From: Convolutriloba macropyga
Taxonomy: Eukaryota
Direction of reading: 5' to 3'
Length of the DNA: 64,000 nt
NCBI RefSeq assembly: GCF_964194025.1
Contig: NC_134468.1
Coordinates: 6,262,001-6,326,000, forward strand
Shown here piece by piece: positions 898-49,994 of this stretch. The notes beneath the pieces are model-generated. The model did no database searches, was not told where the DNA came from, and saw only the letters and a program-made list of their open reading frames with translations. Made by a program: the position numbers and the translations under genes. Every line of letters starts with the position of its first letter. Positions within the stretch are counted from its first letter, which is position 1.

Positions 898-3892
898 AAC
901 ACAATTACGAAAATTAGGCCAGAAGTCTCCATAAAATTAATGTCCTGAGAAAACTGACAGAAGTTCACAGTCCAATAATAGTAATATTCACTAATCCGAA
1001 GAAGAAAAATGAAACGTTAAGTGGATGCCTCTATAAGAGACATCGGAAATGCTCACATTCTCGTTCTTAAAACGCTAAAAAGCGTACGTCTGCGATATAG
1101 AAGTGGAAATCATCATTACCAAGCCCAAAACATGGGGAAGAACGACCTGCAAAACCAGGCTTATGATTTTGACAAATTTGAAAAGCAGTAAAAAGCCAGA
1201 AAAACTTTGAACCCAAATAATGTAGAGCTTTTACACCTATTACAATCCAAGCCCTTTCATTGCAAAAAAAAGAAATTCAGAAATAACAAATAAAAAACAG
1301 TCAGGAGAGGGAAAAGAAATATAGTTGAAACAGATTTGAACATGAGTTGCAAAACTTATGGCTGAGAATAAAGATAAAAGTGTTCCACGCAAAAACCTCT
1401 GATTATTAATTATATCCATATTTTAGAATAAATATCAAACAATTGTTCTGTGTTTAGAGCCCTATTACTTGTCTTTCATTGGCAGAGCTCTATAAAATTG
1501 TCCTTTCGATTAACTTTCAATATCAATTGAGGTTTATATCACTAATGTAAATTTTAAAGTTGAGTGCAAGAATTCCTTACAATTCGAGTGAGGCCGCAAA
1601 AACAATTGATTGCGAAGAACAACAACGTAGTCGCAAGAAATCTGACAGAATGAACGCTTAACTTCACAAAGTCCACAGCGTGTAGTTCGACAATGATTCA
1701 CTCCGTCAAATTTATATCTAAAAGAGAAGGACAAACAGACTTTCCGCTGCAAATTATCTACAAAAACCAAACGAAAAGATAAAATTAAGAAACCGAACGG
1801 TTAATAAGTCTCATTCATTCACTCATTGATGCGAGTTTTCTGTTTTCGAACAATCGTGTTTTCTGTTTAAGAATTAAATAAGAATAACAGTTGCTACAAA
1901 AAATAACTATAGAAACAGAGCCCTATTACAAAACTTTCAAGAAACAGTACAAATGCGGTTACGTATAGCGTAATCAATGTCATATACATGTTAAATAAAC
2001 AAAAAAGATCTTGAAAGAAAATAAACGTGAAAAAAACTAATGGCAAGCAATTAAAACCAGTTGGAATTTAGTAATTTTGAGGACTACAAACACCACTAAA
2101 AAAGGCGTTTGAAACTACAGAATGTCGATCAGAAGATTAACAATTGTCAACCAATTATTTTCTAAAAACCTATAAAAGCAAACGAACAAAATTTGGCCGC
2201 CGTTTTGTCTTGGTCCATCGGAGAAAGGACAACAGTTAGCAAAGTAGCAATCCCTTTCACTCTCCGATTTTCGCTTTGTTCAACAAAATGCGCAAAAGAT
2301 TTAGTTCATATGCTTCGACTCAAAACAAGATGCGATCAGTAGTTGCCTCAGCTTTAACTTCGCAGCAATTAATCACTGTTCTGGTTCCGTTCAAATGTTC
2401 TCCATGAGCTCATCATTCAAAACTTAATCTAGAAGACTAATGCAACCCTGTGTCATAGAATCTAAGTTCTGAACTTGGAACCAGTATCAATTTAAAAGAA
2501 AAATTAAATTCAGTTCTGAAAGATGGTATCCCAATAGACCTTTTGAACATGCCCAACTGTATTTTCAGTAAAAAAAAAGTGCACATACTTCTCCGATAGG
2601 AATTCTGAGAAGCGTGAATGTATATGTCTTTCACGTGTAAGCGCACATAATCGTATGCAAGAAACCCAATAACTAGTTTATTCAAATTCCCGCTAGCTTT
2701 TAAACAACCTCAAAACCCATTCAAGTTAAAGGTTAGGATTTAATTGATTAATTGATTTAAAACTTATAGGCACTTAACTTCTAATCACTAATAGGTCGTG
2801 TTTGCACCCAACGTGGATGACGCTAGAATGTAAGGTTCAGACTACTGTCACCCCAAAAGCAATGTTTAGTTACTTCTCTGCTCCAGTTTACTCCGAAGCC
2901 AACGTCAACATATTACCTTCATAGTATCATGATAAAAAACTTGTTGCATCAGTTTCCATTGAATTTTTAAATTTTGCTTAATGAAGGTAAAACCTATTTT
3001 ATGGCGTTATGTTTTAATAATGGAGAAGCGCTGATTGCAGATTCAAAAAACAATTAGCGCCCGAGAATTTCAACCGCAACAATTTCTAATATTTTTGGTC
3101 AAATGTGCATTTTCACCTCTCAGTACACTTGCGCTACATCTTCCTGAATATGAATCATTGAGCCATGGAAAAATTTAGATTGGCCTAATTGTTGTGATAA
3201 ACTTATTAAATAGAGATGAGCCAGCGAGGCATGGGAGATCTGATGAAAAAATTGCATGAGAGTGAGGGTCTTGATGAACCATCCAAGGAAATTTTGAAAA
3301 CCCTAATTGAAGAAAATATTGGAAAAAATGCACGAATTGCCGAATTGGAATCTGAGGTGGCACAGATGAAGATCAAAGTTAATCAACTCGAAGATATCAA
3401 TCAAAAGATTGCCTAATTTTTCGCAATCTACCGTTTAGTTCAAATGGAACCAACCTCTCAGATGTGATTGATCTTATTCAAAATGTGTTGAATGTCAACA
3501 TTGAACCGCGCGATTTAAAAGCGTGCCATCCGTTGGGCAGAGGATCGCCATTCAATCCACCACCAGTTATTGCGAAGTTCGTCTATTTCGACCAAAAGGA
3601 AAGAATCTGGACCAGGAACGGTTTGCTACGGAATTATAGGAATCCAAATAATGGAAAACCGGTTTTTTGATTATCGAGCGATTGAGCAAGTACGAAAAGT
3701 CATTGAAAGAGGAGGGTCAAGCAAAACAGTTAAAGGTTACTACTAAGAATTTGGCACCACTTGTTCAGATCGAGTCAGACGGGATGAAGCGATATCTTGA
3801 ACTGAACTCCATTCAAGATATTATTGAATTGCAACCAGTCGCTAGTAAAATTGAAAGGTTCAATTATCCAAAGAATCTACCACAAAAGCAAA

Positions 3893-6800
3893 GCCAAGTA
3901 TACACGACAACAGCGGGTTCGATGGAAGTCAATGAAATTATCTATAACACGCCTGTTCCAAAGCTAACAAACAGCCAACTTTTGCGCCTGGTACACCTTT
4001 ATCGACCAAAATGCCTTTCCTAAAGCGTATGTGTGACAATTTTGAGAACAGCGACTATCCCAATCTAATGGAGGAACTAAAAAGCAGGAGAGCTGATAAA
4101 GACGAATTGCTTGATTTTGTTATGGGTCTCTTAAGTGGTTCGCCGAATGCCAATGAGACTATTCTTGCTAATATTGAGGAACAGCCGTTTCGGAGCGAAG
4201 AGTGCTGAGAAGAGTCTGGAACATAAGAGTTCACCCCTTAGATTTAATAAAGCGACCAAAATTAGATCTGCATCAAATCACTTCATAATTTTACACTTAA
4301 ATACTAGATCCATTAAAAAACATGATGAAGAATTAGAGGCACTGATATCTTAATTTTGAGTCTCCGCCTTTTGTCATATGTTTAACAGAATCTTGTCTAA
4401 CAGTTAATGATGATCCGAATTTATTCAAGGTAGCAAATTACAATAATTGCTTGACAAAATCAAGAAGTGGTAGGGGTGGAGGTATTATGATCCAAATAAG
4501 TGATGAGGTGAACTTGATTGAGGAGCTGAATTGCAAATTAAATGAAAGTCTTTTGGTTCACTTGAAATTCGGAGAGTTAAAGATTGCTCTGTTAGTGGTT
4601 TGTAATCACCCCAAAATTAACAAGCAGAATATCATTTTTGAGCTCGATAAAACAGTGGAAAACATCAATGAAAATTATGACAGAATAATTGTTTGTGGGG
4701 ACTTAAACATCAACGTGCTAGATGAAAATCTGATGACGTCATCATATCTATCGACTATCCAACCAAATGGTTTTCAACTATGTTGTCGTGAGCCAGCTCG
4801 CATCAGCCGAAATACCTCGACTTGTTTGGATCACTTTTTCGTAAAGAATTTAAGGATTCAGAAAACTTTTGTAATGGAGGATAACAATTATTGCGATCAC
4901 TTTCCAATTGTGTTGGAATTTGAGAAGATTAGCAAAAGTTGTTAACCAGAAATTGGTTTTCGTGACACCAGTTTTTTTTAAAATCGTTGAGTAGATTGTC
5001 TTCTTTTCTTGATAACCTTTCTAAATCACTAGCGACAATAAGATACCAGGAAACGGAAAGTATAAACTGTGCTTTTGACAGATTTGAAAATACTTTTAAA
5101 GAAGTATTAGCAATGTTTGCACCATATCGGAAGTCAAGCAGGAATACAATTAAAAAACCTAACTGGTTTGATAAAAATATGAAAAATTTGATTTGCAAAG
5201 AAACCAATAACACAAGTCATGGAAAATGGACCGTCAGAGCAACCAAAAATTAGAGAAGTTTAAAGCACTACGAACTAAAGTGGAGAAAACAATCAAAGCC
5301 AAAAAGAATTCTTACTATGAGCAAAAGTTCTCAAAATGCATCGGAGACTCAAAACAAGTTTATAAATTTTTAAATGAGCTTAAGGGAGTTACTATTAAAA
5401 ATTCTAAAGTTCCTTACCAAATAAAAGATGGTAGAAGAGTTGATGATAATCTAGATGTTGCAAACGAGCTCAACACTTTTTTTGTAGGTATAGGACAGAA
5501 ACTAAAAGCAGACATCCCAAATGATATTTTTGTTAATCCTAAGGCTAATATTTTGCAGAGTATGTGGCTTTATGAATCAAATTGCAACGAAATCTTGCAA
5601 ATAATTGAGGATCTCAAAGAAAAATCATCTTCGGGAGTTGATGAGAGTAGTACGATTTTGATTAAGAAAACGGGTTTCTTAATTTGCAAGCATCTTGTTC
5701 ATCTCGTAAATAAATCTTTTAAAGACGGTAAATTTCCAAGTATTCTGAAACAAGCTACAACTGTCCCTCTGCACAAGGCAGGGGCGAAAGACGAGATAAA
5801 TAACTACCGACCAATTTCGCTTCTCATTGTGTGGAGTAAAGTTTTTGAACGCGTTATGTATAATCGAATTTATACTTACTTTGAAACTTTCGGTTTGTTC
5901 CATCCTAATCAATTTGGTTTTCGAAAAAAACAGCACTATTAATGCCATCGCAAATTAACAGAGACAGTTCGTGAGAGCCGCCATTGTCAGGTAGCCACAT
6001 TTTTTATTGACTTAAGAAAGGCTTTTGACACGATAGACCACCAAATCCTATTACAAAAGCTCGAACTATATGGTAAAAGAGGATTTTGCCTAAGATGGAT
6101 TAGTGATTATTTATTGGAAAGACAGCAATGTGTTTCAGTCAATAATTGCAACTCCAGCTGGCTGAAGTTAACTTGTGGTGTTCCACAAGGCTCGATTCTT
6201 GGCCCACTCCTTTTTTAAATATACATAAATGACCTTCCACACGTGTGCCAAGTCTTCAGAACTTTTCTATTCGCCGATGATACCAACTTAACAGCAGTCA
6301 ATAGAAAATTTTGAATAAATGCAGAAAGATTTGGTCAAAGAGAAATGGCTCAACGCCAAGTATACACGACAACAGCGGGTTCGATGGAAGTCAATGAAAT
6401 TATCTATAACACGCCTGTTCCAAAGCTAACAAACCGCCAACTTTTGCGCCTGGTACAACTTTATCGACCAAAATGCCTTTCCTGAAGCGTATGCGTGACA
6501 ATTTTGAGAACAGCGACTATACCAATCTAATGGAGGAACTAAAAAGCAGGAGAGCTGATAAAGACGAATTGCTTGATTTTGTTATGGGTCTCTTAAGTGG
6601 TTCGCCGAATGCCAATGAGACTATTCTTGCTAATATTGAGGAACAGCCGTTTCGGAGCGAAGAGTGCTGTGAAGAGTCTGGAACATAAGAGTTCACGCCT
6701 TAGATTTAATAAAGCGACCAAAATTAGATCTGCATCAAATCACTTCATAATTTTACACTTAAATACTAGATCCATTAAAAAACATGATCAAGAATTAGAG

Positions 6801-8819
6801 GCACTGATATCTTAATTTGAGTCTCCGCCTTTTGTCATATGTTTAACAGAATCTTGTCTAACAGTTAATGATGATCCGAATTTATTCAAGGTAGCAAATT
6901 ACAATAATTGCTTGACAAAATCAAGAAGTGGTAGGGGTGGAGGTATTATGATCCAAATAAGTGATAAGGTGAACTTGATTGAGGAGCTGAATTGCAAATT
7001 AAATGAAAGTCTTTTGGTTCACTTGAAATTCGGAGAGTTAAAGATTGCTCTGTTAGTGGTTTGTAATCACCCCAGAATTAACAAGCAGAACATCATTTTT
7101 GAGCTCGATAAAACAGTGGAAAACATCAATGAAAATTATGACAGAATAATTGTTTGTGGGGACTTCAACATCAACGTGCTAGATGAAAATCTGATGACGT
7201 CATCATATCTATCGACTATCCAACCAAATGGTTTTCAACTATGTTGTCGTGAGCCAGCTCGCATCAGCCGAAATACCTCGACTTGTTTGGATCACTTTTT
7301 CGTAAAGAATTTAAGGATTCAGAAAACTTTTGTAATGGAGGATAACAATTATTGCGATCACTTTCCAATTGTGTTGGAATTTGAGAAGATTAGCAAAAGT
7401 TGTTAACCAGAAATTGGTTTTCGTGACACCAGTTTTTTTAAAATCGTTGAGTAGATTGTCTTCTTTTCTTGATAACCTTTCTAAATCACTAGCGACAATA
7501 AGATACCAGGAAACGGAAAGTATAAACTGTGCTTTTGACAGATTTGAAAATACTTTTAAAGAAGTATTAGCAATGTTTGCACCATATCGGAAGTCAAGCA
7601 GGAATACAATTAAAAAACCTAACTGGTTTGATAAAAATATGAAAAATTTGATTTGCAAAGAAACCAATAACACAAGTCATGGAAAATGGACCGTCAGAAC
7701 AACCAAAAATTAGAGAAATTTAAAGCACTACGAACTAAAGTGGAGAAAACAATCATAGCCAAAAAGAATTCTTTCTATGAGCAAAAGTTCTCAAAATGCA
7801 TCGGAGACTCGAAACAAGTTTATAAATTTTTAAATGAGCTTAAGGGAGTTACTATTAAAAATTCTAAAGTTCCTTACCAAATAAAAGATGGTAGAAGAGT
7901 TGATGATAATCTAGATGTTGCAAACGAGCTCAACACTTTTTTGTAGGTATAGGACAGAAACTAAAAGCAGACATCCCAAATGATATTTTTGTTAATCCTG
8001 ATGCTAATATTTTGCAGAGTATGTGGCTTTATGAATCAAATTGCAACGAAATCTTGCAAATAATTGAGGATCTCAAAGAAAAATCATCTTCGGGAGTTGA
8101 TGAGAGTAGTACGATTTTGATTAAGAAAACGGGTTTCTTAATTTGCAAGCATCTTGTTCATCTCGTAAATAAATCTTTTAAAGACGGTAAATTTCCAAGT
8201 ATTCTGAAACAAGCTACAACTGTCCCTCTGCACAAGGCAGGGGCGAAAGACGAGATAAATAACTACCGACCAATTTCGCTTCTCATTGTGTGGAGTAAAG
8301 TTTTTGAACGCGTTATGTATAATCAAATTTATACTTACTTTGAAACTTTCGGTTTGTTCCATCCTAATCAATTTGGTTTTCGAAAAAAACAGCACTATTA
8401 ATGCCATCGCAAAAATAACAGAGACAGTTCGTGAGAGCCGCCATTGTCAGGTAGCCACATTCTTTATTGACTTAAGAAAGGCTTTTGACACGATAGACCA
8501 CCAAATCCTATTACAAAAGCTCGAACTATATGGTAAAAGAGGATTTTGCCTAAGATGGATTAGTGATTATTTATTGGAAAGACAGCAATGTGTTTCAGTC
8601 AATAATTGCAACTCCAGCTGGCTGAAGTTAACTTGTGGTGTTCCACAAGGCTCGATTCTTGGCCCACTCCTTTTTTTAATATACATAAATGACCTTCCAC
8701 ACGTGTGCCAAGTCTTCAGAACTTTTCTATTCGCAGATGATACCAACTTAACAGCAGTCAATAGAAAATTTTGAATAAATGCAAAAAAATTTGGTCAAAG
8801 AGAAATGGCTCAACGCCAA
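3893..8819 (+). repeat. Tandem duplication of ~2.46 kb (3893-6354 and 6355-8814) within the LINE
   Basis: Near-identical sequence at an offset of ~2460. GCCAA microhomology at 3893, 6355 and 8815. Confidence 0.95.
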
Positions 8820-9992
8820 CAAGCTGTCTCTTAATCATGAAAACAGTTGTCAAATGAATATTAAAATAGAAAACAGTGCCTCTAATGTCAATAGCTTTTC
8901 CGTATTTAAATTAAATTCTGTTAATATACCTGAGTCAGAAAGCTGCAAGTATCTGGGTGCGTTTGGATAAAAAATTGAAATTCACAGAGCACATTGAGGA
9001 TGTGAAGAAAAAGTTAGCAATGCAGTGCGGAATAGTGTCAAAATTATGGCATTATGTACCAAAACGTCTTTTACTCCAGTTTTATTCATCAAATATCAAA
9101 CCAATCATTCAATATGGTGTGCTGATATATGGATTTGTAAGCTTTACTTCCCTTCAACCTTTAGTTCTATTGCAAAAAAAAATACTCAGGCTCATTTTGT
9201 TCCAGAAATACACACAAAATGTAACACAGTTTTTTGACAAATACAAGGTCTTAACTGCTCACGAATTGCATATTTACTTCTTAAATTTGTAATAAAATCA
9301 GTAAATAAAATGCACACAGATACATATCTTAATGAGTTGATTTCTTTCGCATCCCGATCAAACAATTCCACGAGAAGATCGTTGAAATGGTTTTTGAAAG
9401 TACCAAAGTGTAAACGAAAGTCTGAAATGAATTCATTGAGATACAGAGTTGCCAAATTACTTAATCTTTTTTATTGAAAACAATGTGTTACCATTAAACT
9501 ATAATGAGCTTTCTAGTTTTTCGCTTGTCAATCTGGTGCACAAAATAAGAGACAATTACATTTTATCGAATTATGAATTAACAAAAACAATCTTCTCCTA
9601 GTTGCGACTTTGTGTACACCTTTCGATGAATTTTTTTTTAAGTTATTAAAAAGACAACACAAAATGATCCAATTTGCTGTCGCCGGGGTCTTCTAAAGGG
9701 GTAAAAAAATTGTCAAAAATTGAAAATTCCATCAAATAAATTGAGAATTTCATCTATTATCTTTCAATAGTGAAAGTTTTTTTTCTTTTTGAATAGTCAT
9801 ATCCAATCGTAAAAAAAAAGAATAAAGGGCAGTGCTCAGTGATCCAGTCGGATCCGTAAACTGTCCTCTCTGAGTGTACAATGATTTTATGTATAATGCA
9901 ATGATAACTTTAGGCTTTCTGATCTTGAACTCTATAAGTAGGTAATTTTGTCATGTGTTATATTTTGATGTTTATTTATACTCAGAGGAATT

Positions 9993-10050: not shown

Positions 10051-10868
10051 TGCGAAATCAAAGTTTAATTGAGGCTTAAAGAAGTAAAATTCATTTTTAG
10101 GGATAATTTAGTTGGATACAACATGGTCACATATCTTACGCAAATAGTTTCCAAAAATAGCCCCCTGTTTTCAGAGATTAGGTTTTTTCTCTAGTTTGTT
10201 ATGGTGCATCCGCTTTTTAAACGATCTGATAAATTTTGGCAGCTTCTATAAGAGGGCCGAAATTTGCTATTTTATCAACAATGTCTTATTCGGTTCCGAA
10301 TACCTCTAAAATTTAGTTACGACTTCAATCACATAGATCTAATGAGTTACGGTTGTCACATTAACCACCATCAGAACTTCTTTGGAAAATTGATCCAATT
10401 GATTGAATTGATAATTGTTACAATGGCTTATGGTAAACTGATCAGTTTTGAGGGTTACAGTTTCACATTTAAGCGTAAAATTGACAGTTCGTGATATCTT
10501 CTGACGCTGTTAAGGGACTGCTTGCTTGATTTTCCTTAAACGTGTCTGGTCAGCATTGGATAGAGATCAAACATAGTGCACAAATTGAAAACAATCATTT
10601 GGACATCAATGTTGATGAGAACAGTGATAAAAAACAAGTGAACATAATTTATCAGTAGAGAGGAACGAAACTCATTTTCAGATATTTGCGTTTGGCCAAT
10701 TCATAGATTCTACGAAAATAATAGAAAAACAAAGCAAACTGCTACTTAGAAAAAACTGTCTTACATTCTTACAAGAAAAAATCAATCAATAATTGAATAA
10801 CGTATTAAATTTTTTTTTAAAAAAATAATAAAATTCTCACAAAACTTGTCAATTGAGTGCTGATGCAG

Positions 10869-12218: not shown

Positions 12219-13210
12219 GCAATCGCGAAAAATCGCCGCCAGAAGCGAGAAATTACCACTGCCAACCAGAAGAGACCGCAGATTGTGAAGCATGAAAAAA
12301 ATCGACTTCTGAAACAAAGACCCCGCAGCTCAGCAGCAGTTTCCAAAAGAATTAAAAGAGGATCTTTGAAGGGTTTTTACTTTAAAAGAACAAATACAAA
12401 AAACAATTACAAAACTAAACGGGATTTGGACGCCATATATAGTGATACTTATGGGTACGATAATTATAACTATTATGATCACGGCGGTTATGAATACCAA
12501 CCTAACTATAACTACCAACCTAACTATGATTACCAACCTAACTATGATTACCAACCTAACTATGATTACCAACCTAACTATGATTACCAACCTAACTATG
12601 ATTACCAGCCTAGAGATTATTATCCAGCCAAAGACTATTACCAAAATTCTTACGACTACGATACTTACCATCATGATTATTCCGCATACTACGATTACCT
12701 AACTTATGAAGATTATGAAATAAAGCGAGAAGAATTCAACCCATTTGACCAATTTTTTAACATATCGGAGGACGACTACTTCAGTATGTACGACAGATCA
12801 AACCTTCTAGATTATTCCGACTTCAGACTTGCAGCTTTCTTCACCCAGGGTGAAATGAAGTATAACGGCTATCAGAAAGATGATTTCATAGCACAATGTA
12901 CTTTTGACGGCAAAAAATGCGGAGCAACTTGGTTTAAAACGTACCAAGACCCGTATTACGGAAACTGTTTCACTTTCAACTCAATCCGAGATAGAAATTT
13001 GTCACACCCAGTTTTCATTCGGTCAAGTGGCAAAACAGGGCAAGAGTATGGGCTAAAACTCACTCTGTTCTTTGATGTGGAAGAGTATATTGGTCTTCTG
13101 GGGCAGAATGCTGGCGGGAGGGTTCTGGTTTTTGACCCAGAAACACATGGCAACATCAGATCGCAAAGCTCGGCAGTTGGAGCTGGTACCAACACCTTTA
13201 TCTCCGTCAG
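12219..13210 (+). CDS. DEG/ENaC gene A exon: convertase-site linker, Tyr/Asp-rich repeat, and extracellular core (palm/beta-ball region)
   Basis: RRQKR, RIKR and KTKR sites; YDYQPN repeats; FIAQCTFDGKKC...DPYYGNCFTFN...GQEYGLKLTL are DEG/ENaC signatures. GT donor at 13211. Confidence 0.9.
12489..12614 (+). repeat. Coding 18-nt minisatellite, 7 units of Y[D/E/N]YQP[N/R]
   Basis: TATGATTACCAACCTAAC repeated in frame. Confidence 0.95.
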
Positions 13211-42050: not shown

Positions 42051-42199
42051 GAATTTGCAACTGGCCCTACATCCAGTGCCCAGAGGAGGAGTACTGTGCT
42101 GAGAAGTGTGACGGGGATTCAGAGTGTACAGTAGACAAAGGATACGATGAGAGTCTAGAAATCGGATGCCCCGAGAGCTCATGCTCCACAACACTAGTG
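42051..42199 (+). CDS. DEG/ENaC gene B exon 5: second, divergent LDLa-like repeat and CUB start
   Basis: ICNWPYIQCPEEEYCAEKCDGDSECTVDKGYDESLEIGC (6 Cys, CDG and DE motifs), then SCSTTLV. Donor is either GC (42200) or a weak GT (42197). Confidence 0.82.
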
Positions 42200-43459
42200 G
42201 CACGTTTAGTGCATTATCTCTCTTGCTTGGTATCAAAACCAAATTGAACAGAAGAACAATATTAATAAGATTTCTTCACCTAATGAAGAAATAGTTCGTA
42301 GTAATGGTCAATAATAAAAAGAAAATTTGTGAATGATTCCTTCCGTGCGCATAATTTCCCCACCGCATAAAGAGTTATCATCTCACGCTGCTCTGTAAGC
42401 TATTGCAGAAACGTTTGCCTTCATACAAAAATCGTCATCAAAGCATCATACAAATGCCACAATTCAAAGCAAAAAGACGGAAAGGGGAAAACATGAGTTT
42501 TCAGATCAATGTTACAAAATGAAGAACCTTCCGGAGTAATTGCAACTCACTCCGAGAAAGATGAAAACATGCACGAAAATATTTTCAACTCACAGTACAT
42601 ATGCTTAGTCGTTAAAATAACTTTAATTGGTCCATATTCAAGAAAAATGACGAAAGTACTTATTTTTTTAAAATATATAATGGATTAATACAAATCTTTG
42701 TTATCAAACTTTGATTCGGAATCAAAAGTTTTTGCTCATTAAAAGTTCAAATAAGGAAGTGTTTGTTTTGTTGAAGAATTCTTCATTCTTCTCAATCGCT
42801 CTCTATAACATCAGTCTTGTTCTTCTTAAATTTCAGAATTCTTCTCTTTTCAATCTTCATTGAACTCTTGAAAATCCAGATAGAAGTACTTATGGAGAAA
42901 ATTCAGATAGAAGTTGGCCAATTTCCTAAAAGAGCAAGAAATTAAGATCCACGTGAAATCAGTACAACTTGATTATAACTAAATATTTTGTTCAAGTTTT
43001 TGCGAAATTTAAAAGATTTATGATCAAGGTAAACAGATTTCACTAACTGCTTTCAAGGAAAACAGGCAAACTTCTGTCTGGATTTTGTCCGTAAGTACTT
43101 TTGTCATTTTTTAAGAACGTAGACAAATTAAAATTATATTGATTTTCATTCGACTCACGTAAAACTCAAGGAAAACGTAAATCGGAATGTTACTGAAAAA
43201 CTTCTTCTAAAACGGGTACTTTACTAGGTAATTTTTTCATTTGATCGCTTAATTTTGCTAACAAAACTAGTTGGCTAAATTCTTTCAAATTGCACAAAAA
43301 GTACGTTCTTAAGAATATTTAATCCCAAAAAACTCTGATTTGATATGAAAATACACTTGAGTCAAGCCAAGTCATAATTGAGCAAAAGATTCGCAAACTT
43401 ACGAAAAGATCAGCCTGGTAACGAAAGGCAATAAAAACAGTTGATTTGATTTCTTTCAG

Positions 43460-43598
43460 GCAACGACAACTGAACAAGATGTGACCTCTCAAAATTGGCC
43501 AAACCACTATGCATCTAACACAGACTGTGTCTGGATCATAGACGCAACCGGCAACGGTGATCAAGTCAGCTTGACATTCAAAGAACTCAGCACTGAAG
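43460..43598 (+). CDS. DEG/ENaC gene B exon 6: N-terminal half of CUB domain
   Basis: ATTTEQDVTSQNWPNHYASNTDCVWIIDATGNGDQVSLTFKELSTE matches the CUB pattern (SPNYP..Y..N..C.W.I...V.L.F..F.LE). The 3' end is inferred from a GA donor. Confidence 0.85.
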
Positions 43599-43954
43599 GA
43601 ATGCAGCAATTGGCATACATTTAAAAACAAAACTTAAATTAAGGAGGCCACAATTGATAATTTTGTTTAAGCGAAGAATAGAAATTGCTGTCTCACAAAT
43701 TACTACAGTCCTGATCACAATGTTGATCAATGTATAAACAAAAAACAAATAGAACAGCTATTCTTCATTTTTAAGAACTCAAGGGGCAAAAATGGTTAAT
43801 GCGTTCTTAACTAATCATAATTTTTATGGGTTGAAAAGAGGTGGTATTATCAATTGCAAATCAAGGCACAAAAATTAAAAATTACAAACCAAGGCACAAA
43901 GGAACAATCTAATTCGACATTGTTCCTTAATTACTTTTTCAATTGCTTGCCAAG

Positions 43955-44160
43955 GCGAGCCTGGTGACTGCAATGATTACGTTGAACTTTACGATGGAGA
44001 ATTTGTCAACGCAACGGTTATCAAAATTGACGGACGCAAACGAATATGTGGATTTTCGAACCCATCAACTACAAATTACATTTCTACTGGTAGTGTTATG
44101 CTCATTCGGTTCGTATCGGATGAATTGAACAACTTTGAGGGATTCCAATTGGGATATCAG
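43955..44160 (+). CDS. DEG/ENaC gene B exon 7: C-terminal half of CUB domain
   Basis: GEPGDCNDYVELYDG...RICG...STGSVMLIRFVSDELNNFEGFQLGYQ, collinear with gene A exon 10869-11074. Inferred GC donor. Confidence 0.87.
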
Positions 44161-45126
44161 GCTAGGATCGGTTTCCTTTCATTAAATGTTTCACCCAATA
44201 TTCCAATACTCACTCCATTTTAAACCCAATATTCAAAATCTTAACAATATTCTCCGTTCTTGACCTATAAAAAAATGTCTCATAGCACAGCAAAGTATTC
44301 AAAAAATGAATATTTGTTAAGACACGGGAGCGTGAAGGCTGCTACTAACGAGTACCCTCCAAAATGGGGGCACAAATGGTAAGAACCTAACAATCTTCTA
44401 GCAAAATCCACTCGCCCTTTAATTATTTACGTCTTTTTAGCTCTTGAACAACTAATACTTTTAGCCCATAGGAATAAAATACGACGGGAGACTTAGCATT
44501 TCTTTCGCACGCACGTGACATTGTCTCAATAAAGAGTTAAAGTACAGTCTGATTGTAGCTGAAATCATGCAGGCTCACATGTACTGAAAAAATCAGTCGC
44601 GTTAAATTTTGAAACTAAACATTGACATATTTGGAAAGCGTTAAACTCTGCTCAAACAAATTCCTTCACGGCATATACATGCCACTGATCAACAGTCTGG
44701 CTCATTATGCAATGATGATCATCAACGAAACAGAACCCAAAAAATAAAAGAACGATATCTGAAAACAATGCAAACGCCAAACTATTGACAAACTATTGAC
44801 TCGAGAAATAATTGTCGGTCAAATATTTGAACTGATGAAATTGCATATAATCAGTACTGCTCTGAACAAAAACTGTTATCGTATCTGCTTTAACATTCAA
44901 CTCATACAGCTTAAGAAATCAAGATAAACTCTACTTTCCAATAACTTGCATTAAATTGCCGCTAAAAAATTAGAGAGCAGTGAAATTTAATATGGAGCAC
45001 ATTTGATTTCATATACGTCAGCAGCAATTGATGTCCATGTCGTATTCTAATTCGAAAAACGCCGTTCGCGGGCTGCTGGTATAATTCGATTTGCTGCAAA
45101 AAGTAAAAGCAGCAAACCGAAGAAAA

Positions 45127-45254
45127 TGGGGACAAAACGTTGATGAGTTTTCGATTCCCGGGAACTTAGTACGATGGACTCTGATAGATTAGTCTATCAG
45201 AGTCCATCGTACTAAGTTCCCGGGAATCGAAAACTCATCAACGTTTTGTCCCCA
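45127..45254. repeat. Perfect palindrome (62-bp arms, TTAG loop)
   Basis: TGGGGACAAAACG...CTGATAGA-ttag-TCTATCAG...CGTTTTGTCCCCA. Confidence 0.95.
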
Positions 45255-45475
45255 GTTTAGGTCGATAACAATTCTGCCGTTAAAGAAGTATCCATTGAAA
45301 CATAAAAAGTTAATTCAAGCTGCGCCAGCGGGCGCTTAGACGGGTAAACTATGTCAATTTTTCTTTCGCCTCATTAATGACGAATTTAACCGCCTTTTGT
45401 AAATGCATTTTTTAAAATTAGTTGTGCTAAATTGCTTTATGACTTTACGGTACAAAGCAAAGTGACACCAGCTTT

Positions 45476-48400
45476 AGAGAGAGAGAGAGAGAGTCAATTT
45501 ATCCTCGCCCAGTTAATACGACGAAAATTATATAAACACATTTTAAACATCAATCAACCATTATTTGAGACAACGGAATTAATCATCAAACGAAATTATC
45601 AACAATTTAACATCTTTAACATCAATTGCCTGAAAAATAGGCCAGGGAAGGACAAGCAACGAGGAGGTCGTTAGACCTGCTTTCCGGCGCGCCCTACATT
45701 TTTCAAACTGATAAAATTATTAGACAAAAACTCAAAAGACAGCAAAAATGTGAAAACATACTTTTGCCATCAAAAAATTCTTAGGAAAAAAACTTATCAC
45801 AATAAAGCATAGAATCCAACATTAGCATCCTCCTGCTGCCACGAACACTTAGCACTGTACTTATTCTATTGCCCCATTTGACCGTAAAAGTTCATGTTGC
45901 TACTTGTTCTATAGTGTCAGTTTCGGAAAGAATAAATGTCAAAAACTATATTTAGACATGAAAAATTTGAACTTTTGAGTGCAAAAAAGAGCCCGCGGTG
46001 CCTTCCAGGAAGGCACCGGCCAAATTTTGGCGTAGAATTCAGCAAAATATTAAGTGATTTAGTATGAGCTTTGGTTCACCTGTAATCCTTGCAAAAGATT
46101 TTTCGAACAAGCTCATCGTTCGCAAGTATGAAAGAATCTCTTAATAGATGGTAAAAACCGGAAACTTGCCACATGCTTGCCTTAATCTCCCCTTCTGGGA
46201 GAAGACTTTGCATTTTCAGCAGATTAAACAGAAGAGAAGAAGAGAGGTACGGTGACAAATGGAGTTTCTCTCCATTTTGATTTCGAGTTTGGGATTTTAA
46301 GTAACCTTAAGAGATGCACGTCTAGTGGACACACCTGATCTTTCCAATTGAAACATATCGTTCAAATACTTTTCTGTATGAAGCCCGTTTAATGATTCAA
46401 TCTATTGAATCATTAAATGCATTTTAAGTATTTCAATTAAAGTATTTTTTCTGTAGCTGATACACAACTAAAGAACAAAAGGTGCAGCATCCGTAAACCA
46501 GTACGCCGTACTGCATAACTGGATTCATTACGCTTTTATAGTTTTCAAGTAACTGGTACGCGTGGAACAAAGTGCCTTAGCTTCGAGATTACACCGCATT
46601 GCCCGCTCAGTCTTGTAAAAACTAATTTTATGTGCGAACGGTAGGAAAACTTTGAATCAACTGTTATACCAAGATATTTCCATTCATTTTTCATAACAAC
46701 ATAATGATATTCAATTTTAAACTGATGACTGGAAGCACTTGTTTTATTATTCAATTGAAAGGTTTTTGAGATGTTAAGCTTTACTTTATTTGCATTTAGC
46801 CACTTCGTTATCTTTAGAAGGTCGGCTTGAATTTCTTCACTCGAACAGTTCAATCCACATATATTAGTGTCGTCGGCAAAGAGATAAATATCATTTTGAG
46901 AGCAAACATTTGGCAGATCATTAATGTAAATCAAAAATAAGAGTGGCCCAAGGATGGATCCCTGAGGAACGCCACAGTTTACATTTAACCAATTTGATGA
47001 CACACCCATTTTTGTATTTTTTTGTGATCTTTCAGATAAATCGCTTTTAAACCATTTTAAGGCAGTATGACGAATACCATGTAGTTGCATTTTGTAGAGT
47101 AAAATTTGGTGATCAAATGTGTCAAAAGCCTTCTTCAGTTCAAGAAGAAAGTTTACGGTTTCTACTTTAATTCTCCTTATTTTTTCAGTTAATTCTGCCA
47201 ATGCATCAATTGTTGAATGGGTTTTCCGGAATCCCAATTGCTTAGAATATAGTAGATTAAAATTCTCCGTGTACTCACATATTCTGGCGAACATTGCTCC
47301 CTCATATTTTGCTCCAAACCATTAGAAGATATTGGTCTATAACTATTTTCACCCAACCGAGAACCATCTTTGAATAGAGGAATTACCTTAGCTTTTCTGA
47401 GTTCTTTTGAGAAGCAACCTTCATTGAAGGATTGATTTATTAGTGAAGCTAGATAGCAAGTGATCACAGATCCTGCAGTTTTCACAATTATGTTATTAAT
47501 TTCATCTTCACGCGATGATGTTTTCTCCGGAAGAGATTCTATGATTCCTTTTATTTCATATTCGGATACCGAACTCAATCTAAATGACATTTCAATGTCT
47601 CTAGGATAAATTATTGGTTCAGCGGGAATACTTTGCTGTATGTTTTTGCCAACATTAAAAAAAACTCATTCAATTTTTCCGCAACTTCAAAAGCGGATGG
47701 ATTGGAATCAGAACTCAAAAAACAGAATTTCAATTTAGGAATCATAGTATTGATAAGAGTCTTTCCATTGAGCTCATTTAGAAGATTGAATGTTTGTCTT
47801 GAGTCTCCGATACAATTTTTGAACTGCTTCTTATAATACGCTTTTTGCTTGCTTCATGCTCTTTTCGAGTCGTAACCGAATGTCTTTAAATTTCTTTAGC
47901 AAAGTCAAATTTGATTTATATTTTTCCATTTCTTGTGCGTCAAATTACGTTGAGTACGTAGATTTACGAGATTGTTATCATACCATTTTGGTAGAAAACT
48001 TTTTCTAGGATGAATTTGCTTTAAAGGTGCATATCGATCAGTAATCGAAACAAAAACCTTATGAAACTCGTCGAAAGCCCTGCTTCTACAGCAGTAAGTT
48101 GTTTTGAGCGGATTAGTTAATTCGTGATTCAAAACGATATTGTATTCCTCAACCTTATCGCGGTGATGGAGAAAAGAAGTATCTCTTATAAACTTACTAT
48201 TGGTTTCAGTTTTTCCTTGAATATTCCATTTGAACAACACAAGATAGTGATCAGAAAAACTTTGATGCTCAAGAATAATGCAATCAGAGAGCAAGTTTTG
48301 ATAAATTAAATGGTCAATGCACGACACTGAACGATCGGTGACTCGAGTTGGTTCGTTCGGTAGAAGCCGGAAACAATTGGAGTTGATTGTATTTACTTAA

Positions 48401-49800
48401 TTTTATGTGAGTAAATTATCCTTTAAGGTATCAATATTGAAATCCCCACAAATAACTGGAGAAAAATTCGAAATGAAATTGCTCAGCATTTCATCCAAAA
48501 GTTCTACAAACTCCAAATTGTTTGCCCTTGGTTTATTGTAAATTACTACTAAACGAAAAAGATAACCTGTCTCACTTTTAACAGCCAATGACTTCTAGCA
48601 TGTTTTCGTAGGCAGTTTGGAACGCGCATTAATCATTAATTTGTATCATTACACATCCTCCTTTTGAATCACGATTCTTCGATATTATACTTTTATAGCC
48701 CTTTACAGGAAAAGAATGTGGATTATCATTTTCCATCAGCCACGCTTCGGTTAAACAAAGGATGTCTGGCGAAGACTCAAGACTACTTACAAGTGCTTCC
48801 AGATGTTCGAAGTGTTTTTTTAGTGAGCGAATATTTAGGCTTAGAACATAAAGCAAAGAACAACAAGCTATTGCTTTAGGTGAATTCAGTACACGGTGAG
48901 GAGGGGGAAAATATTACTCCGAGAATGATTGAAGCATTTACTGAATTCATGGAAGTCATAATTCAGATTCAGCTCATACAGCTCGATTATCTTGTACACT
49001 CTCTCATTTTCTCTCCAAACATAGAAAATTGTGCCTTCTCGCGTCCAAACGGACTCAATTCTTTGATCCTTTTTGATCTTAGAGAAGAATTCGGCACGTG
49101 CTGGTGATATGTCTTCAAAAACCCTGACGTTCGATGACAAGTTTTCTTGTTCCGCAACATTTCTGTCTTCATGACTCTTCGTGCAAAACGCACAATAATA
49201 GGACGCTCTCCTGTTTTGCCACCAGGAAGTCTATGAGCAGTGGAAATATCTCTCGTAGAGAGTGACACCCATACATGACGCAACATCGATGACCTTCTCT
49301 ATCGTTTCAGAATCTTTCTCTCCCACAAGAATCCCTTCATCGTTCTGTCTGGCACTTTCTTTTACACCAAGTAGTCTGATATTATCCCTTCTATTATAAT
49401 TCTCCACAGTTTCAGCTGGAGCCATTGCTACAAGCCTGCATAGTTCTTCTTGGTGAAAAAGATAGTCTTCAATTTTCTGCATGATTTCTGCCTTTAGGTC
49501 TTCTTTGATTGCCTCGATGGCCTCTTGAAAAGCGTTTGGCAGCTTGAATTTCATTTTTTATTATAGGGATAAGATCGTTTCGCATATGCCCAATGCACGT
49601 TGGGATGCTAATACTGATGCGATCTTGTCTATTTTTGACAGGAAAACATCTAAGCTATCTGTACTAGGGCTGGAATCAGGTTTAGCCCTCTTTGCATCAT
49701 GCTTTGAATTGATAGGTATTTGGCCAAGAAACCGCAAGTTGGGTAGCTCAGTGTCTTCGCTTTCATTTGACATCTCTGAAACTATTTAATAAGTTTATCA
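45476..49800 (-). mobile_element. Decayed full-length LINE (ORF1 + APE-RT; CR1/L2-like) in a gene B intron
   Basis: ORF1 (NYNRRDNIRLLGV; ISTAHRLPG...PIIVRF), APE (SLNIRSL, LCLTEAWL, ICGDFNID, SCIDH) and RT (KKAFDT, GVPQGSILGPLLFLIYINDL, FADDT). The (TC)n tail reads as (GA)n at 45476-45493. Frameshifted; 5' end approximate. Confidence 0.93.
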
Positions 49801-49994
49801 CAACAATTGGGCTAAAATTAGAGGGCTCTTGGCTTGCCCTTTTTTGAGTATATCGTTGACTTAATTTTAAGATATATTAAATCATCATAACCATTAAACT
49901 ATAAGAATTTTGGTATCTAAGTAGGTACTGAAATCAACTTTGTGGAAAATGCACAAATGATTTCAAGTAACTTGATGAGGAAACCGTTCATTAG

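What the first reader, a model, noticed from the sequence alone, without database searches (positions are those of the whole stretch)
43599..43954. Probable GA-AG intron splitting the CUB domain, again with complementary ends
Seen: exon 6 keeps the CUB pattern up to ...LTFKELSTE and the frame hits a stop a few codons later. Exon 7 needs a phase-1 donor (acceptor CAAG|GC, homologous to gene A's GCAG|GC). The only phase-1 site that keeps the core CUB strand is AAG|GAATGC, i.e. GTATGC with T changed to A. AGCAATTG (43605-12) pairs with CAATTGCT (43940-47), with weaker pairing beyond, and gene A's acceptor also carries CAATTG. Established: GA donors are very rare in animals but are reported as common in a few lineages such as the copepod Eurytemora affinis. 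Prediction: gene A's upstream exon, outside the window, has a donor followed by sequence complementary to GTCAATTGAGTGCTGA.
Basis: partly seen in the sequence, partly recalled or inferred. Interest (0 to 1): 0.72.

Follow-up and report, generated by a model that had tools for sequence, protein, structure and literature searches.

The report
Hairpin-closed GA-AG intron in acoel
In a channel gene of the acoel worm Convolutriloba macropyga, an intron begins with GA instead of the near-universal GT and its two ends base-pair; three old gene copies keep both features, so it is very probably a working intron of an unusual class, although no RNA data could be laid on it.

Summary
Exon 6 (43460-43598) and exon 7 (43955-44160) of a DEG/ENaC gene join into one continuous CUB domain only if 43599-43954 is removed. 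That stretch starts with GA and ends with AG.

- **The A at 43600 is real.** Four DNA read sets and a second haplotype all carry it.
- **Paralogs agree.** Two tandem paralogs have an intron at the same codon position, with GC (gene A) and GA (gene C) donors. Silent sites between them are saturated (dS 1.5 or more). All three genes give intact 814-913 aa reading frames only with these junctions.
- **End pairing tracks the non-GT donors.** All six non-GT introns (introns 6 and 7 in three paralogs) have pairing ends (z -2.0 to -4.4). None of 41 GT-AG introns does.
- **Gene A prediction partly fulfilled.** A 10-base complement follows the donor, which lies 385 bases before the window.

Weak points:
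- No RNA run was available, so splicing is inferred.
- Gene B's helix is the weakest of the six: 11 bp, p about 0.02. It has about 2% probability in a fold of the whole intron.

The scan had already noted hairpin-closed GA/GG/GC-AG introns at other loci of this genome. I found no report of them in acoels in the held paper library. The closest analogues are euglenid intermediate introns and the GA-AG introns of Eurytemora and Oikopleura.

The parts
43460..43598 (+). Exon 6 of gene B (first half of the CUB domain). It starts in phase 0 after TTTCAG and ends with the first base (G) of a split Gly codon.
   Evidence: Pfam CUB profile 6-49, E 2e-9. Homologous exons of paralogs A and C. Two allelic differences, both synonymous.
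43599..43954 (+). Intron 6 of gene B, 356 nt, GA...AG, phase 1.
   Evidence: Only junction that keeps the CUB profile continuous and the gene's frame open. Single-copy by read depth. 21 substitutions and 32 indel columns against the second haplotype.
43599..43600 (+). GA donor dinucleotide (context AAG|GAATGC).
   Evidence: Present in four DNA run assemblies and in the second haplotype L047. Paralogs have GC (A) and GA (C) at the same position.
43603..43613 (+). 5' arm of the terminal helix (intron +5..+15, GCAGCAATTGG).
   Evidence: RNAduplex. Identical in both haplotypes.
43939..43950 (+). 3' arm of the terminal helix (intron -16..-5, TCAATTGCTTGC, one bulged T).
   Evidence: RNAduplex. Of the two allelic changes at this end, C>T at 43950 lies in the arm and turns G-C into G-U. 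T>G at 43938 lies one base outside the arm and adds a C-G pair, giving 13 bp and -15.7 kcal/mol in the other haplotype.
43651..43661 (+). Inner inverted repeat, 5' copy (CAATTGATAAT). It pairs with 43846-43856.
   Evidence: Present in the minimum-energy and centroid folds. Coordinates. CAATTG occurs four times in this intron.
43846..43856 (+). Inner inverted repeat, 3' copy (ATTATCAATTG).
43925..43931 (+). Candidate branch-point region (CCTTAAT, A at 43929/43930, about 25 nt before the acceptor). Inferred only.
   Evidence: Read from the sequence. The other haplotype has CCTTACT, which still fits yUnAy. Not tested.
43953..43954 (+). AG acceptor (CCAAG|GC).
   Evidence: Phase-1 acceptor homologous to GATGCAG|GC of gene A and GATCAG|GA of gene C.
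43955..44160 (+). Exon 7 of gene B (second half of the CUB domain). It is followed by a GC donor (CAG|GCTAGG).
   Evidence: Pfam CUB profile 54-110. Paralog alignment. Allelic changes: two synonymous and one Ala>Ser.
43557..43558 (+). Cryptic in-frame GT (AACG|GTGATC), the only GT alternative. Its use would delete 14 residues (DQVSLTFKELSTE plus the split Gly).
   Evidence: It removes CUB profile positions 35-49. It is not conserved in paralogs A or C.
44161..49994 (+). Intron 7 of gene B, GC...AG, also closed by a helix (GATCGGTTTCC with GGAAACCG...).
   Evidence: Duplex -21.4 kcal/mol, z -3.6. Paralog C has the compensated pair ATTGGTTTC / GAAACCAAT.
10845..10868 (+). 3' end of gene A's intron 6. 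CTTGTCAATT (10845-10854) pairs with AATTGACAAG just after the GC donor, which lies 385 bases before the window. The acceptor AG is at 10867-10868.
   Evidence: The intron is 11,251 nt long and holds two LINE-like insertions.

Best explanation
43599-43954 is a genuine intron of a functional DEG/ENaC channel gene (LDLa-LDLa-CUB insert) of Convolutriloba macropyga. It is removed exactly between 43598 and 43955, although it starts with GA.

It belongs to a minority class of introns in this genome. These keep G at +1, AG at the 3' end and an exonic AG before the donor, but lack T at +2. In them, a helix between the first and last 5-25 intron bases brings the two splice sites together.

**Most likely mechanism (inferred).** The ordinary U2-type spliceosome does the chemistry. 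The terminal helix takes over part of the splice-site pairing that U1 binding to a GT donor normally provides.

**Shown:**
- the DNA sequence;
- the reading-frame and domain requirement;
- conservation of a non-GT donor and of complementarity in three anciently diverged paralogs;
- restriction of end pairing to the non-GT introns.

**Inferred:**
- the excision itself;
- the role of the helix;
- the involvement of the spliceosome.
For: **Domain and frame**
- CUB profile continuity holds only with this junction.
- The ORFs are intact at 814/913/847 aa in B/A/C only with GA/GC/GA-AG at intron 6 and GC-AG at intron 7.
- dN is 0.16-0.20 against dS 1.5-2.5, including in the CUB exons.
- Allelic exon changes are four synonymous to one conservative.

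**Real base**
- The A at 43600 is present in four read sets and two haplotypes.

**Paralogs**
- The phase-1 position is the same in all three, with donors GAAG|GCAAGC (A) and GAAG|GAGAGA (C). There is no usable GT before the first in-frame stop.

**End pairing**
- Over 40-nt ends, the six non-GT introns give -14.0 to -26.1 kcal/mol (z -2.0 to -4.4).
- The 21 GT-AG introns of the same genes give -3.1 to -11.9 (z -0.6 to +1.7).
- Twenty GT-AG introns of five CCT chaperonin genes give z -1.2 to +1.65.

**Covariation**
- In intron 6, GACAA:TTGTC in A becomes GACAT:ATGTC in C.
- In intron 7, CGGTTTCC:GGAAACCG in A and B becomes TGGTTTC:GAAACCA in C.
- Both allelic changes at B's 3' end are helix-compatible.

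**Other**
- Apart from these arms the introns share no similarity.
- The intron is single-copy.
- Intronless relatives read straight across the junction with equal spacing.
- The donor context AG|GAA matches RNA-supported GA-AG introns of Eurytemora and Oikopleura (PMC7072748).
Against: - **No RNA evidence.** No RNA run holds the stretch, and no transcript-derived protein was found.
- **Gene B's helix is the weakest of the six.** In a fold of the whole intron it has about 2% probability and lies 3.1 kcal/mol above the minimum. The whole intron is no more stable than shuffles (z -0.47). The minimum-energy fold uses a different end-to-end pairing, 43594-43600 with 43935-43941.
- **Non-independence.** The six non-GT introns represent only two independent intron positions.
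- **Allelic polymorphism gives no extra support.** Two differences in the 43 terminal bases, against about 6-7% in the interior, do not show added constraint.
- **The 5' arm overlaps intron positions +5 and +6.** These normally pair with U1 and U6, so the helix would have to open during catalysis.
- **Rarity in the samples I defined myself.** Non-GT introns were 0 of about 20 in the CCT genes. The crotonase-family sample was uninformative.
Confidence: 0.72

Rival explanations
1. The intron really is GA-AG and is removed by the spliceosome, but the end complementarity in gene B does nothing. It is a decaying relic of an ancestral inverted repeat, or a by-product of the fourfold CAATTG motif.
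For: - B's helix has only 11 bp, with p about 0.02.
- It has about 2% probability in the whole-intron ensemble.
- The palindrome CAATTG occurs four times in the intron, so several alternative pairings exist.
- GA-AG introns of Eurytemora and Oikopleura are described without any hairpin, with the same AG|GAA context.
Against: - With silent sites saturated, a neutral repeat should have vanished. Yet all three paralogs keep complementary arms, with compensated changes, at introns of 356, 1,708 and 11,251 nt.
- None of 41 GT-AG introns shows such pairing.
- The other allele of B has a longer helix.
Confidence: 0.15
2. The intron is cut out by a non-spliceosomal, structure-guided pathway (endonuclease plus ligase, or the unknown machinery proposed for euglenid nonconventional introns). 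The helix is then the recognition element itself.
For: - The helix starts 1-5 nt from both junctions in all six introns.
- No U1 gene has a base other than A opposite donor position +2: 0 copies against 22.
- Euglenid nonconventional introns have the same general anatomy (PMC4770533).
Against: - G at +1, AG at the 3' end and exonic AG before the donor are kept in 6 of 6 introns. These are spliceosomal signatures, and euglenid nonconventional introns lack them.
- A yUnAy candidate branch site sits about 25 nt before the acceptor.
- No bulge-helix-bulge motif was seen by eye.
Confidence: 0.07
3. The GA site is not used. The spliceosome uses the GT at 43557 and makes a protein lacking 14 residues of the CUB core, or gene B's CUB exon pair is no longer functional.
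For: - AACG|GTGATC is an in-frame (phase 1) GT donor 42 nt upstream.
- No RNA evidence contradicts its use.
Against: - The 42 nt encode the conserved strand (I/V)x(L/I)TF(E/K)(D/E)L.., kept in A, C and distant relatives. The two alleles do not differ there.
- The GT is absent from A and C.
- Its use would remove CUB profile positions 35-49.
- The whole gene is intact and constrained.
Confidence: 0.05

Closest known systems
GA-AG (and GG-AG) U2-type introns of the copepod Eurytemora affinis and the tunicate Oikopleura dioica; GA-AG intron of human FGFR genes
   Same: - GA at the donor with a normal AG acceptor.
- Exonic AG before the donor and A at +3 (AG|GAA), exactly as in gene B (PMC7072748).
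- They are a minority of introns in otherwise GT-AG genomes.
   Different: - Those introns are supported by RNA-seq; this one is not.
- No terminal helix is described for them.
- A U1 variant was proposed there. Here 22 U1 copies all carry the normal A opposite +2 and none carries another base.
Nonconventional and 'intermediate' introns of euglenids (and diplonemids)
   Same: - A stable helix brings the two intron ends together.
- Complementarity rather than sequence is conserved, with compensatory changes between homologues.
- There is a purine at +1.
- Some have GT/GC 5' ends (PMC4770533, PMC3935182).
   Different: - Euglenid introns pair at +4..+6 with -8..-6 (usually CAG/CTG), end in a pyrimidine, and lack spliceosomal borders.
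- The acoel introns keep AG|G...AG, and the register of the helix varies (+1..+5 to -1..-5).
- The host is an animal, not a euglenozoan.
Transposon-derived non-canonical introns (MITE-derived introns of Fritillaria and other tunicates; introner-like elements of Amoebophrya)
   Same: Non-GT borders combined with inverted repeats at the intron ends (PMC13326754, PMC7789003).
   Different: - Those are multi-copy element families, often with target-site duplications.
- This intron is single-copy by read depth.
- It sits at one position in three ancient paralogs, with unrelated interiors of 356 to 11,251 nt.
Conserved long-range RNA pairings that assist splicing of ordinary GT-AG introns (yeast RP51B-type stems, conserved complementary regions in human pre-mRNAs)
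   Same: Intramolecular pairing shortens the effective distance between splice signals (PMC8052449; the yeast case is from my own knowledge).
   Different: Those act on canonical introns and usually link the donor to the branch-point region. Here pairing is confined to non-GT introns and abuts both junctions.

Membership tests
U2-type spliceosomal intron with GA donor (Eurytemora/Oikopleura type) | G at +1, AG at the 3' end, exonic AG before the donor, and A at +3 (AG|GAA). | tested here: met
   AAG|GAATGC ... CCAAG|. The consensus is taken from PMC7072748.
U2-type spliceosomal intron with GA donor (Eurytemora/Oikopleura type) | Junction seen in RNA (spliced reads, cDNA). | not testable with these tools
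   Only four DNA runs hold the stretch and no RNA run was offered. No transcript-derived protein was found in three protein searches. Poly(A) RNA-seq of this species exists publicly (PMC13650328).
U2-type spliceosomal intron with GA donor (Eurytemora/Oikopleura type) | Branch point and lariat formation. | not tested
   Only a candidate yUnAy at 43925-43931 was read from the sequence.
Hairpin-closed non-GT introns of this genome (class proposed by this scan) | Non-T at +2 together with a helix between the first and last ~25 intron bases, absent from GT-AG introns. | tested here: met
   B6 gives -12.7 kcal/mol over the first and last 20 nt, against a minimum of -8.1 in 40 GT-AG introns. The six non-GT introns are all at z -2.0 or below. 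The 41 GT introns are all above z -1.3.
Hairpin-closed non-GT introns of this genome (class proposed by this scan) | Complementarity conserved through compensatory change in homologous introns. | tested here: met
   A-T against T-A at the fifth pair of GACAA/GACAT in paralogs A and C. G-C to G-U, plus a gained C-G pair, between the alleles of B. In intron 7, C-G to T-A.
Hairpin-closed non-GT introns of this genome (class proposed by this scan) | The helix is predicted to form in the context of the whole intron. | tested here: not met
   Pair probabilities are about 0.01-0.02. The constrained fold lies 3.1 kcal/mol above the minimum, and the whole-intron z-score is -0.47. The minimum-energy fold still pairs the 5' junction with -20..-14.
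Euglenid nonconventional intron | Pairing of +4,+5,+6 with -8,-7,-6. Pyrimidine at the intron's 3' end and at the end of the upstream exon. No spliceosomal borders. | tested here: not met
   The intron ends in AG, the upstream exon ends in G, and the pairing register is +5..+15 / -16..-5. The definition is from PMC4770533.
MITE / introner-derived intron | Many near-identical copies in the genome, with terminal inverted repeats at the very ends and a target-site duplication. | tested here: not met
   Read depth across 43599-43954 equals that of the flanking exons, while a true repeat at 42612-42914 reaches several hundred times that depth. No similarity exists between paralogous intron interiors.
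U12-type (minor spliceosome) intron | Donor /RTATCCTT. | tested here: not met
   The donors are GAATGC, GAGAGA and GCAAGC.
CUB domain (PF00431) of the encoded protein | Match to the Pfam profile over its length, above the gathering score. | tested here: met
   Exon 6 scores 38.1 bits (profile 6-49) and exon 7 scores 27.6 bits (profile 54-110), against a cut-off of 21.4.

The most novel reading that the evidence does not exclude
Acoels, or at least Convolutriloba, have a second class of introns defined by structure. These are GN...AG introns (N = A, C or G) whose splice sites are paired by a terminal RNA helix rather than by U1 recognition of GU. The class is old enough to be kept through gene duplications whose silent sites are now saturated. 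It would be the first animal counterpart of the euglenid intermediate or nonconventional introns. It would also mean that standard GT-AG-based gene prediction mis-annotates part of every acoel genome.
Probability: 0.4. Interest if true: 0.85.

Novelty: new variant of a known kind. Interest (0 to 1): 0.66.

Why it matters
**For splicing biology.** GT at the intron start is one of the most invariant signals in eukaryotic genes. If an early-branching bilaterian regularly tolerates GA, GC or GG there, but only when the intron ends are held together by a helix, that bears on how the spliceosome pairs its splice sites. It also shows how an RNA structure can stand in for U1 recognition, and it offers an animal system for a question so far studied mainly in euglenids.

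**For annotation.** The C. macropyga genome note mentions no gene annotation. Predictors that demand GT/GC-AG would break genes such as this channel family, for example by dropping half of a CUB domain.

**For this gene.** The receptor-like LDLa-LDLa-CUB insert in the channel's extracellular loop comes out as intact and expressed-competent rather than decayed.

Tried and rejected
**RNA evidence**
- The look-up of sequencing runs returned only four DNA-like runs of one study, so read laying could confirm only the DNA.
- I looked for transcript-derived proteins spanning the junction.
  - The word-index search with exon 7 found nothing.
  - The search with exon 8 returned only ORF calls on genomic ENA contigs.
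  - The exhaustive representative search gave one near-identical hit, P0010. It proved to be a genomic ORF of the other haplotype that reads through the intron.

**Other ideas tested**
- **Sequencing error at 43600:** rejected.
- **Dedicated U1 variant for non-GT donors:** rejected within the limits of an exact pattern. No U1-like gene has a non-A opposite +2, against 22 with A. The variant 5' end GAUUACCUG in some copies does not match these donors either.
- **MITE origin with living copies:** rejected on read depth.
- **Known RNA family inside the intron (snoRNA, miRNA):** none. There was only a chance-level hit at E 0.35.
- **Polypyrimidine-tract loss as a class feature:** not upheld for intron 6. 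B6 has 70% pyrimidines against a mean of 59% in GT introns. Only intron 7 is lower.

**Wider sampling of introns**
- Five CCT chaperonin genes gave about 20 clean GT-AG introns and no non-GT intron. This served as a control, and it shows that the class is a minority.
- The crotonase family (PF00378) gave ambiguous junctions and no usable result.

**Literature**
- Searches for acoel with non-canonical splicing found nothing relevant.

Full report
**Identity of the sequence**

The window is chromosome 1, 6,262,001-6,326,000, of a 1,175,981,408-base assembly. That size matches the published chromosomal assembly of the acoel Convolutriloba macropyga (1,175.98 Mb; PMC13650328). The genome note reports 3.65% heterozygosity, mentions no gene annotation, and describes a poly(A) RNA-seq data set that the tools here did not serve.

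**The observation**

- Exon 6 of gene B begins after TTTCAG at 43460 and reads ATTTEQDV...DQVSLTFKELSTE, followed by one G at 43598. Read on, the frame stops at 43622.
- Exon 7 begins at 43955 (GC GAG CCT GGT GAC TGC...) after CCAAG.
- The Pfam CUB profile matches exon 6 over positions 6-49, and exon 7 over 54-110 from its fifth residue. Joining 43598 to 43955 therefore restores a continuous domain to within one residue.
- Truncating exon 6 at the GT of 43557 loses positions 35-49.
- The intron is GAATGC...CCAAG.
- AGCAATTG at 43605-43612 and CAATTGCT at 43940-43947 are exact complements. The best duplex extends them to 11 pairs with one bulge, from +5 to +15 and from -16 to -5.

**Is the A real?**

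- Contigs of four DNA runs (one study, two samples) cover 43588-43617 and 43729-43980 with no alternative letter at the donor or acceptor.
- A second haplotype is visible in those runs. I recovered it as a 541-kb ENA contig (L047), 93% identical over 3 kb. It has the same GAATGCAGCAATTGGCATA.
- Depth across the intron equals that of the exons. A true repeat at 42612-42914 reaches several hundred times that depth. The intron is therefore single-copy.

**Paralogs**

The gene is one of three tandem copies on the same strand: C, A and B. Each has ten coding exons recognisable by homology.

- Gene A's exon 6 lies 385 bases before the window, at C1:6261479-6261617. Its intron 6 is 11,251 nt long and contains two LINE-like insertions.
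- Gene C's intron 6 is 1,708 nt.
- At the same phase-1 position after GAA G, the donors are GCAAGC (A), GAGAGA (C) and GAATGC (B). The acceptors are GATGCAG|GC, GATCAG|GA and GCCAAG|GC.
- Neither A nor C has an in-frame GT between the conserved strand and the first stop. The GT at 43557 of B is not conserved.
- Seven of the nine intron positions are plain GT-AG in all three genes.
- Intron 7, directly after the second CUB exon, is GC-AG in all three.
- With this intron table, exons 2-10 translate without a stop into 814 (B), 913 (A) and 847 (C) residues, ending just after the second transmembrane helix.
- Pairwise dS is 1.5-2.5 (saturated) and dN is 0.16-0.20. In the CUB exons dN is 0.23-0.31.
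- The two alleles of B differ in the CUB exons by four synonymous changes and one Ala/Ser change.

These are functional genes, and each needs a non-GT donor at this point.

**Relatives without the intron**

- Other members of the family read straight across the junction with identical spacing between the LTF strand and the first cysteine of the second half. These include ORFs on other ENA assemblies and more distant paralogs in this genome.
- Examples are ...ELTFKEVFVEG-EPGACIDF...VEVEG-ESGKCSDY and ...DELDIEG-DPKKWCPDY.
- One homologue on another assembly (L051) has a canonical GT-AG intron 7 nt upstream, with a pyrimidine-rich acceptor. Another (L050) has a canonical acceptor 16 nt upstream.
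- Intron positions in this small region therefore differ between family members.

**End pairing**

I folded the first 40 against the last 40 intron bases for all 27 introns of the three genes.

| Intron set | n | Duplex energy (kcal/mol) | z against shuffles |
|---|---|---|---|
| GT-AG introns of A, B, C | 21 | -3.1 to -11.9 | -0.6 to +1.7 |
| Non-GT introns (6 and 7 of A, B, C) | 6 | -14.0 to -26.1 | -2.0 to -4.4 |
| GT-AG introns of five CCT chaperonin genes | 20 | not tabulated | -1.2 to +1.65 |

- There is no overlap between the first two sets.
- The CCT junctions were defined by continuity of the Pfam profile.
- Restricted to the first and last 20 bases, the strongest of 40 canonical introns reaches -8.1 kcal/mol, against -12.7 for B6.
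- The helices start 1-5 bases from both junctions.
- Outside the arms, the paralogous introns share no similarity. That is expected at this divergence, so the arms are under selection.
- Complementarity is kept by different sequence.
  - In intron 6, A pairs AATTGACAAG with CTTGTCAATT. C pairs ATTGACAT with ATGTCAAT plus a second helix, CAGCAGC with GTTGCTG. B pairs GCAGCAATTGG with TCAATTGCTTGC.
  - In intron 7, A and B pair CGGTTTCC with GGAAACCG, while C pairs TGGTTTC with GAAACCA.
- Between the alleles of B, two changes fall at the 3' end. One turns G-C into G-U. The other, one base outside the arm, adds a C-G pair. The other allele thus has 13 pairs and -15.7 kcal/mol.

**Weak points**

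- Gene B's helix is the weakest of the six. By itself it is only modestly improbable: p 0.027 against shuffles and 0.019 against mismatched ends.
- In a thermodynamic fold of the whole 356-nt intron it has a probability of about 2%. It costs 3.1 kcal/mol relative to the minimum-energy structure.
- That minimum-energy structure instead pairs the junction itself (43594-43600) with 43935-43941.
- The intron as a whole is no more stable than shuffled sequence.
- CAATTG, a palindrome, occurs four times in the intron. It also builds an inner 11-bp inverted repeat (43651-43661 with 43846-43856), so several registers compete.
- The six non-GT introns represent two independent positions.
- Allelic polymorphism in the terminal bases is not measurably lower than in the interior.
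- Above all, no RNA data could be brought to bear.

**Mechanism**

- All six introns keep exonic AG, G at +1 and AG at the 3' end. Gene B's donor is the local consensus AAG|GTATGC with A for T. It also has the AG|GAA context of the RNA-supported GA-AG introns of Eurytemora and Oikopleura.
- A yUnAy candidate sits about 25 nt before the acceptor in both alleles.
- This points to the ordinary spliceosome. I take the helix to compensate for the poor donor by holding the two sites together.
- The genome has no U1 copy with a changed base opposite +2: 0 against 22 with the normal A. A dedicated U1 is therefore unlikely.
- A non-spliceosomal, helix-guided excision, as discussed for euglenid nonconventional introns, is not excluded. 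It fits the conserved borders less well.

**Comparison and novelty**

The intron is not a member of any of these known kinds:
- the euglenid class, which has a different register and a pyrimidine 3' end;
- MITE-derived introns, because it is single-copy;
- U12 introns.

It works most like a euglenid intermediate intron and looks at its donor like a Eurytemora GA-AG intron.

The held literature has no report of non-canonical or hairpin-closed introns in acoels. This scan had already noted the same kind of intron at other loci of this genome: SDR paralogs, ECI2, another channel gene, and intron 7 of gene A. None of those notes had RNA proof. I treated them as leads only.

This locus adds several things:
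- a contrast within one gene family between GT and non-GT introns;
- a fulfilled prediction for gene A;
- allele data;
- U1 and CCT controls.

**Verdict**

A real, conserved GA-AG intron is very likely (about 0.9). The terminal helix is probably functional in the family (about 0.7), less certainly in gene B's reference allele. The mechanism is inferred.

Noticed in passing
G000 C15:12297861-12298022, C15:12374585-12374746, C15:12406686-12406847, C7:54719635-54719795 (loci L038-L041): Four of the twelve best U1 snRNA copies have a different 5' end (..TTTTGATTACCTGG instead of ..CATACTTACCTGG) and share the same upstream sequence. The bases that pair with donor positions +5 and +6 are changed, but not the A opposite +2. 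This could be a variant U1 for GTAAUC-like donors, or a set of pseudogenes.
   Followed up: partly
window 42612-42914: A short element inside intron 5 of gene B has read depth several hundred times that of its flanks (16,000-38,000 against about 45). Many contigs break at its edges, so it is a very high-copy repeat, possibly a MITE or SINE.
   Followed up: no
window 3200-9500: Two tandem, nearly identical LINE-like copies lie inside gene A's intron 6. Their ORFs look like an endonuclease and a reverse transcriptase (my reading of the translations; no family search was run). They expand the intron to 11.2 kb without disturbing the pairing arms at its ends.
   Followed up: partly
window 43607, 43651, 43851, 43940: The palindrome CAATTG occurs four times in the 356-nt intron, where about 0.1 is expected from composition (my estimate). 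It forms two nested inverted repeats, an outer and an inner one. It could be a zipper of helices or a protein-binding motif.
   Followed up: partly
L051:6340-8125 and L050:7990-8010 (ENA assembly ERZ25074608): Homologous CUB-bearing channel genes on another assembly have canonical GT-AG introns with T-rich acceptors 7 nt and 16 nt upstream of the position used in genes A, B and C. This looks like intron sliding, or replacement between a canonical and a hairpin-closed form. The source organism is not known to me.
   Followed up: partly
G000 C1:47529060-47531486 (874-aa open frame), C2:8537260-8539521 (826-aa frame); P0084 on ERZ26859043: Full-length members of the same channel family are encoded without any intron, beside the ten-exon copies. 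They are either retrocopies or the ancestral state. The family has at least 60 matching loci in this genome.
   Followed up: no
window 42190-42200: The donor of gene B's intron 5 is ambiguous: CTA|GTGGCA (GT) or, one codon later, GTG|GCACGT (GC). I counted it as GT.
   Followed up: no
window 12400-12700: Gene A's exon 8 carries a run of NYDYQP repeats in the acidic linker between the CUB domain and the channel core. Genes B and C lack it.
   Followed up: no
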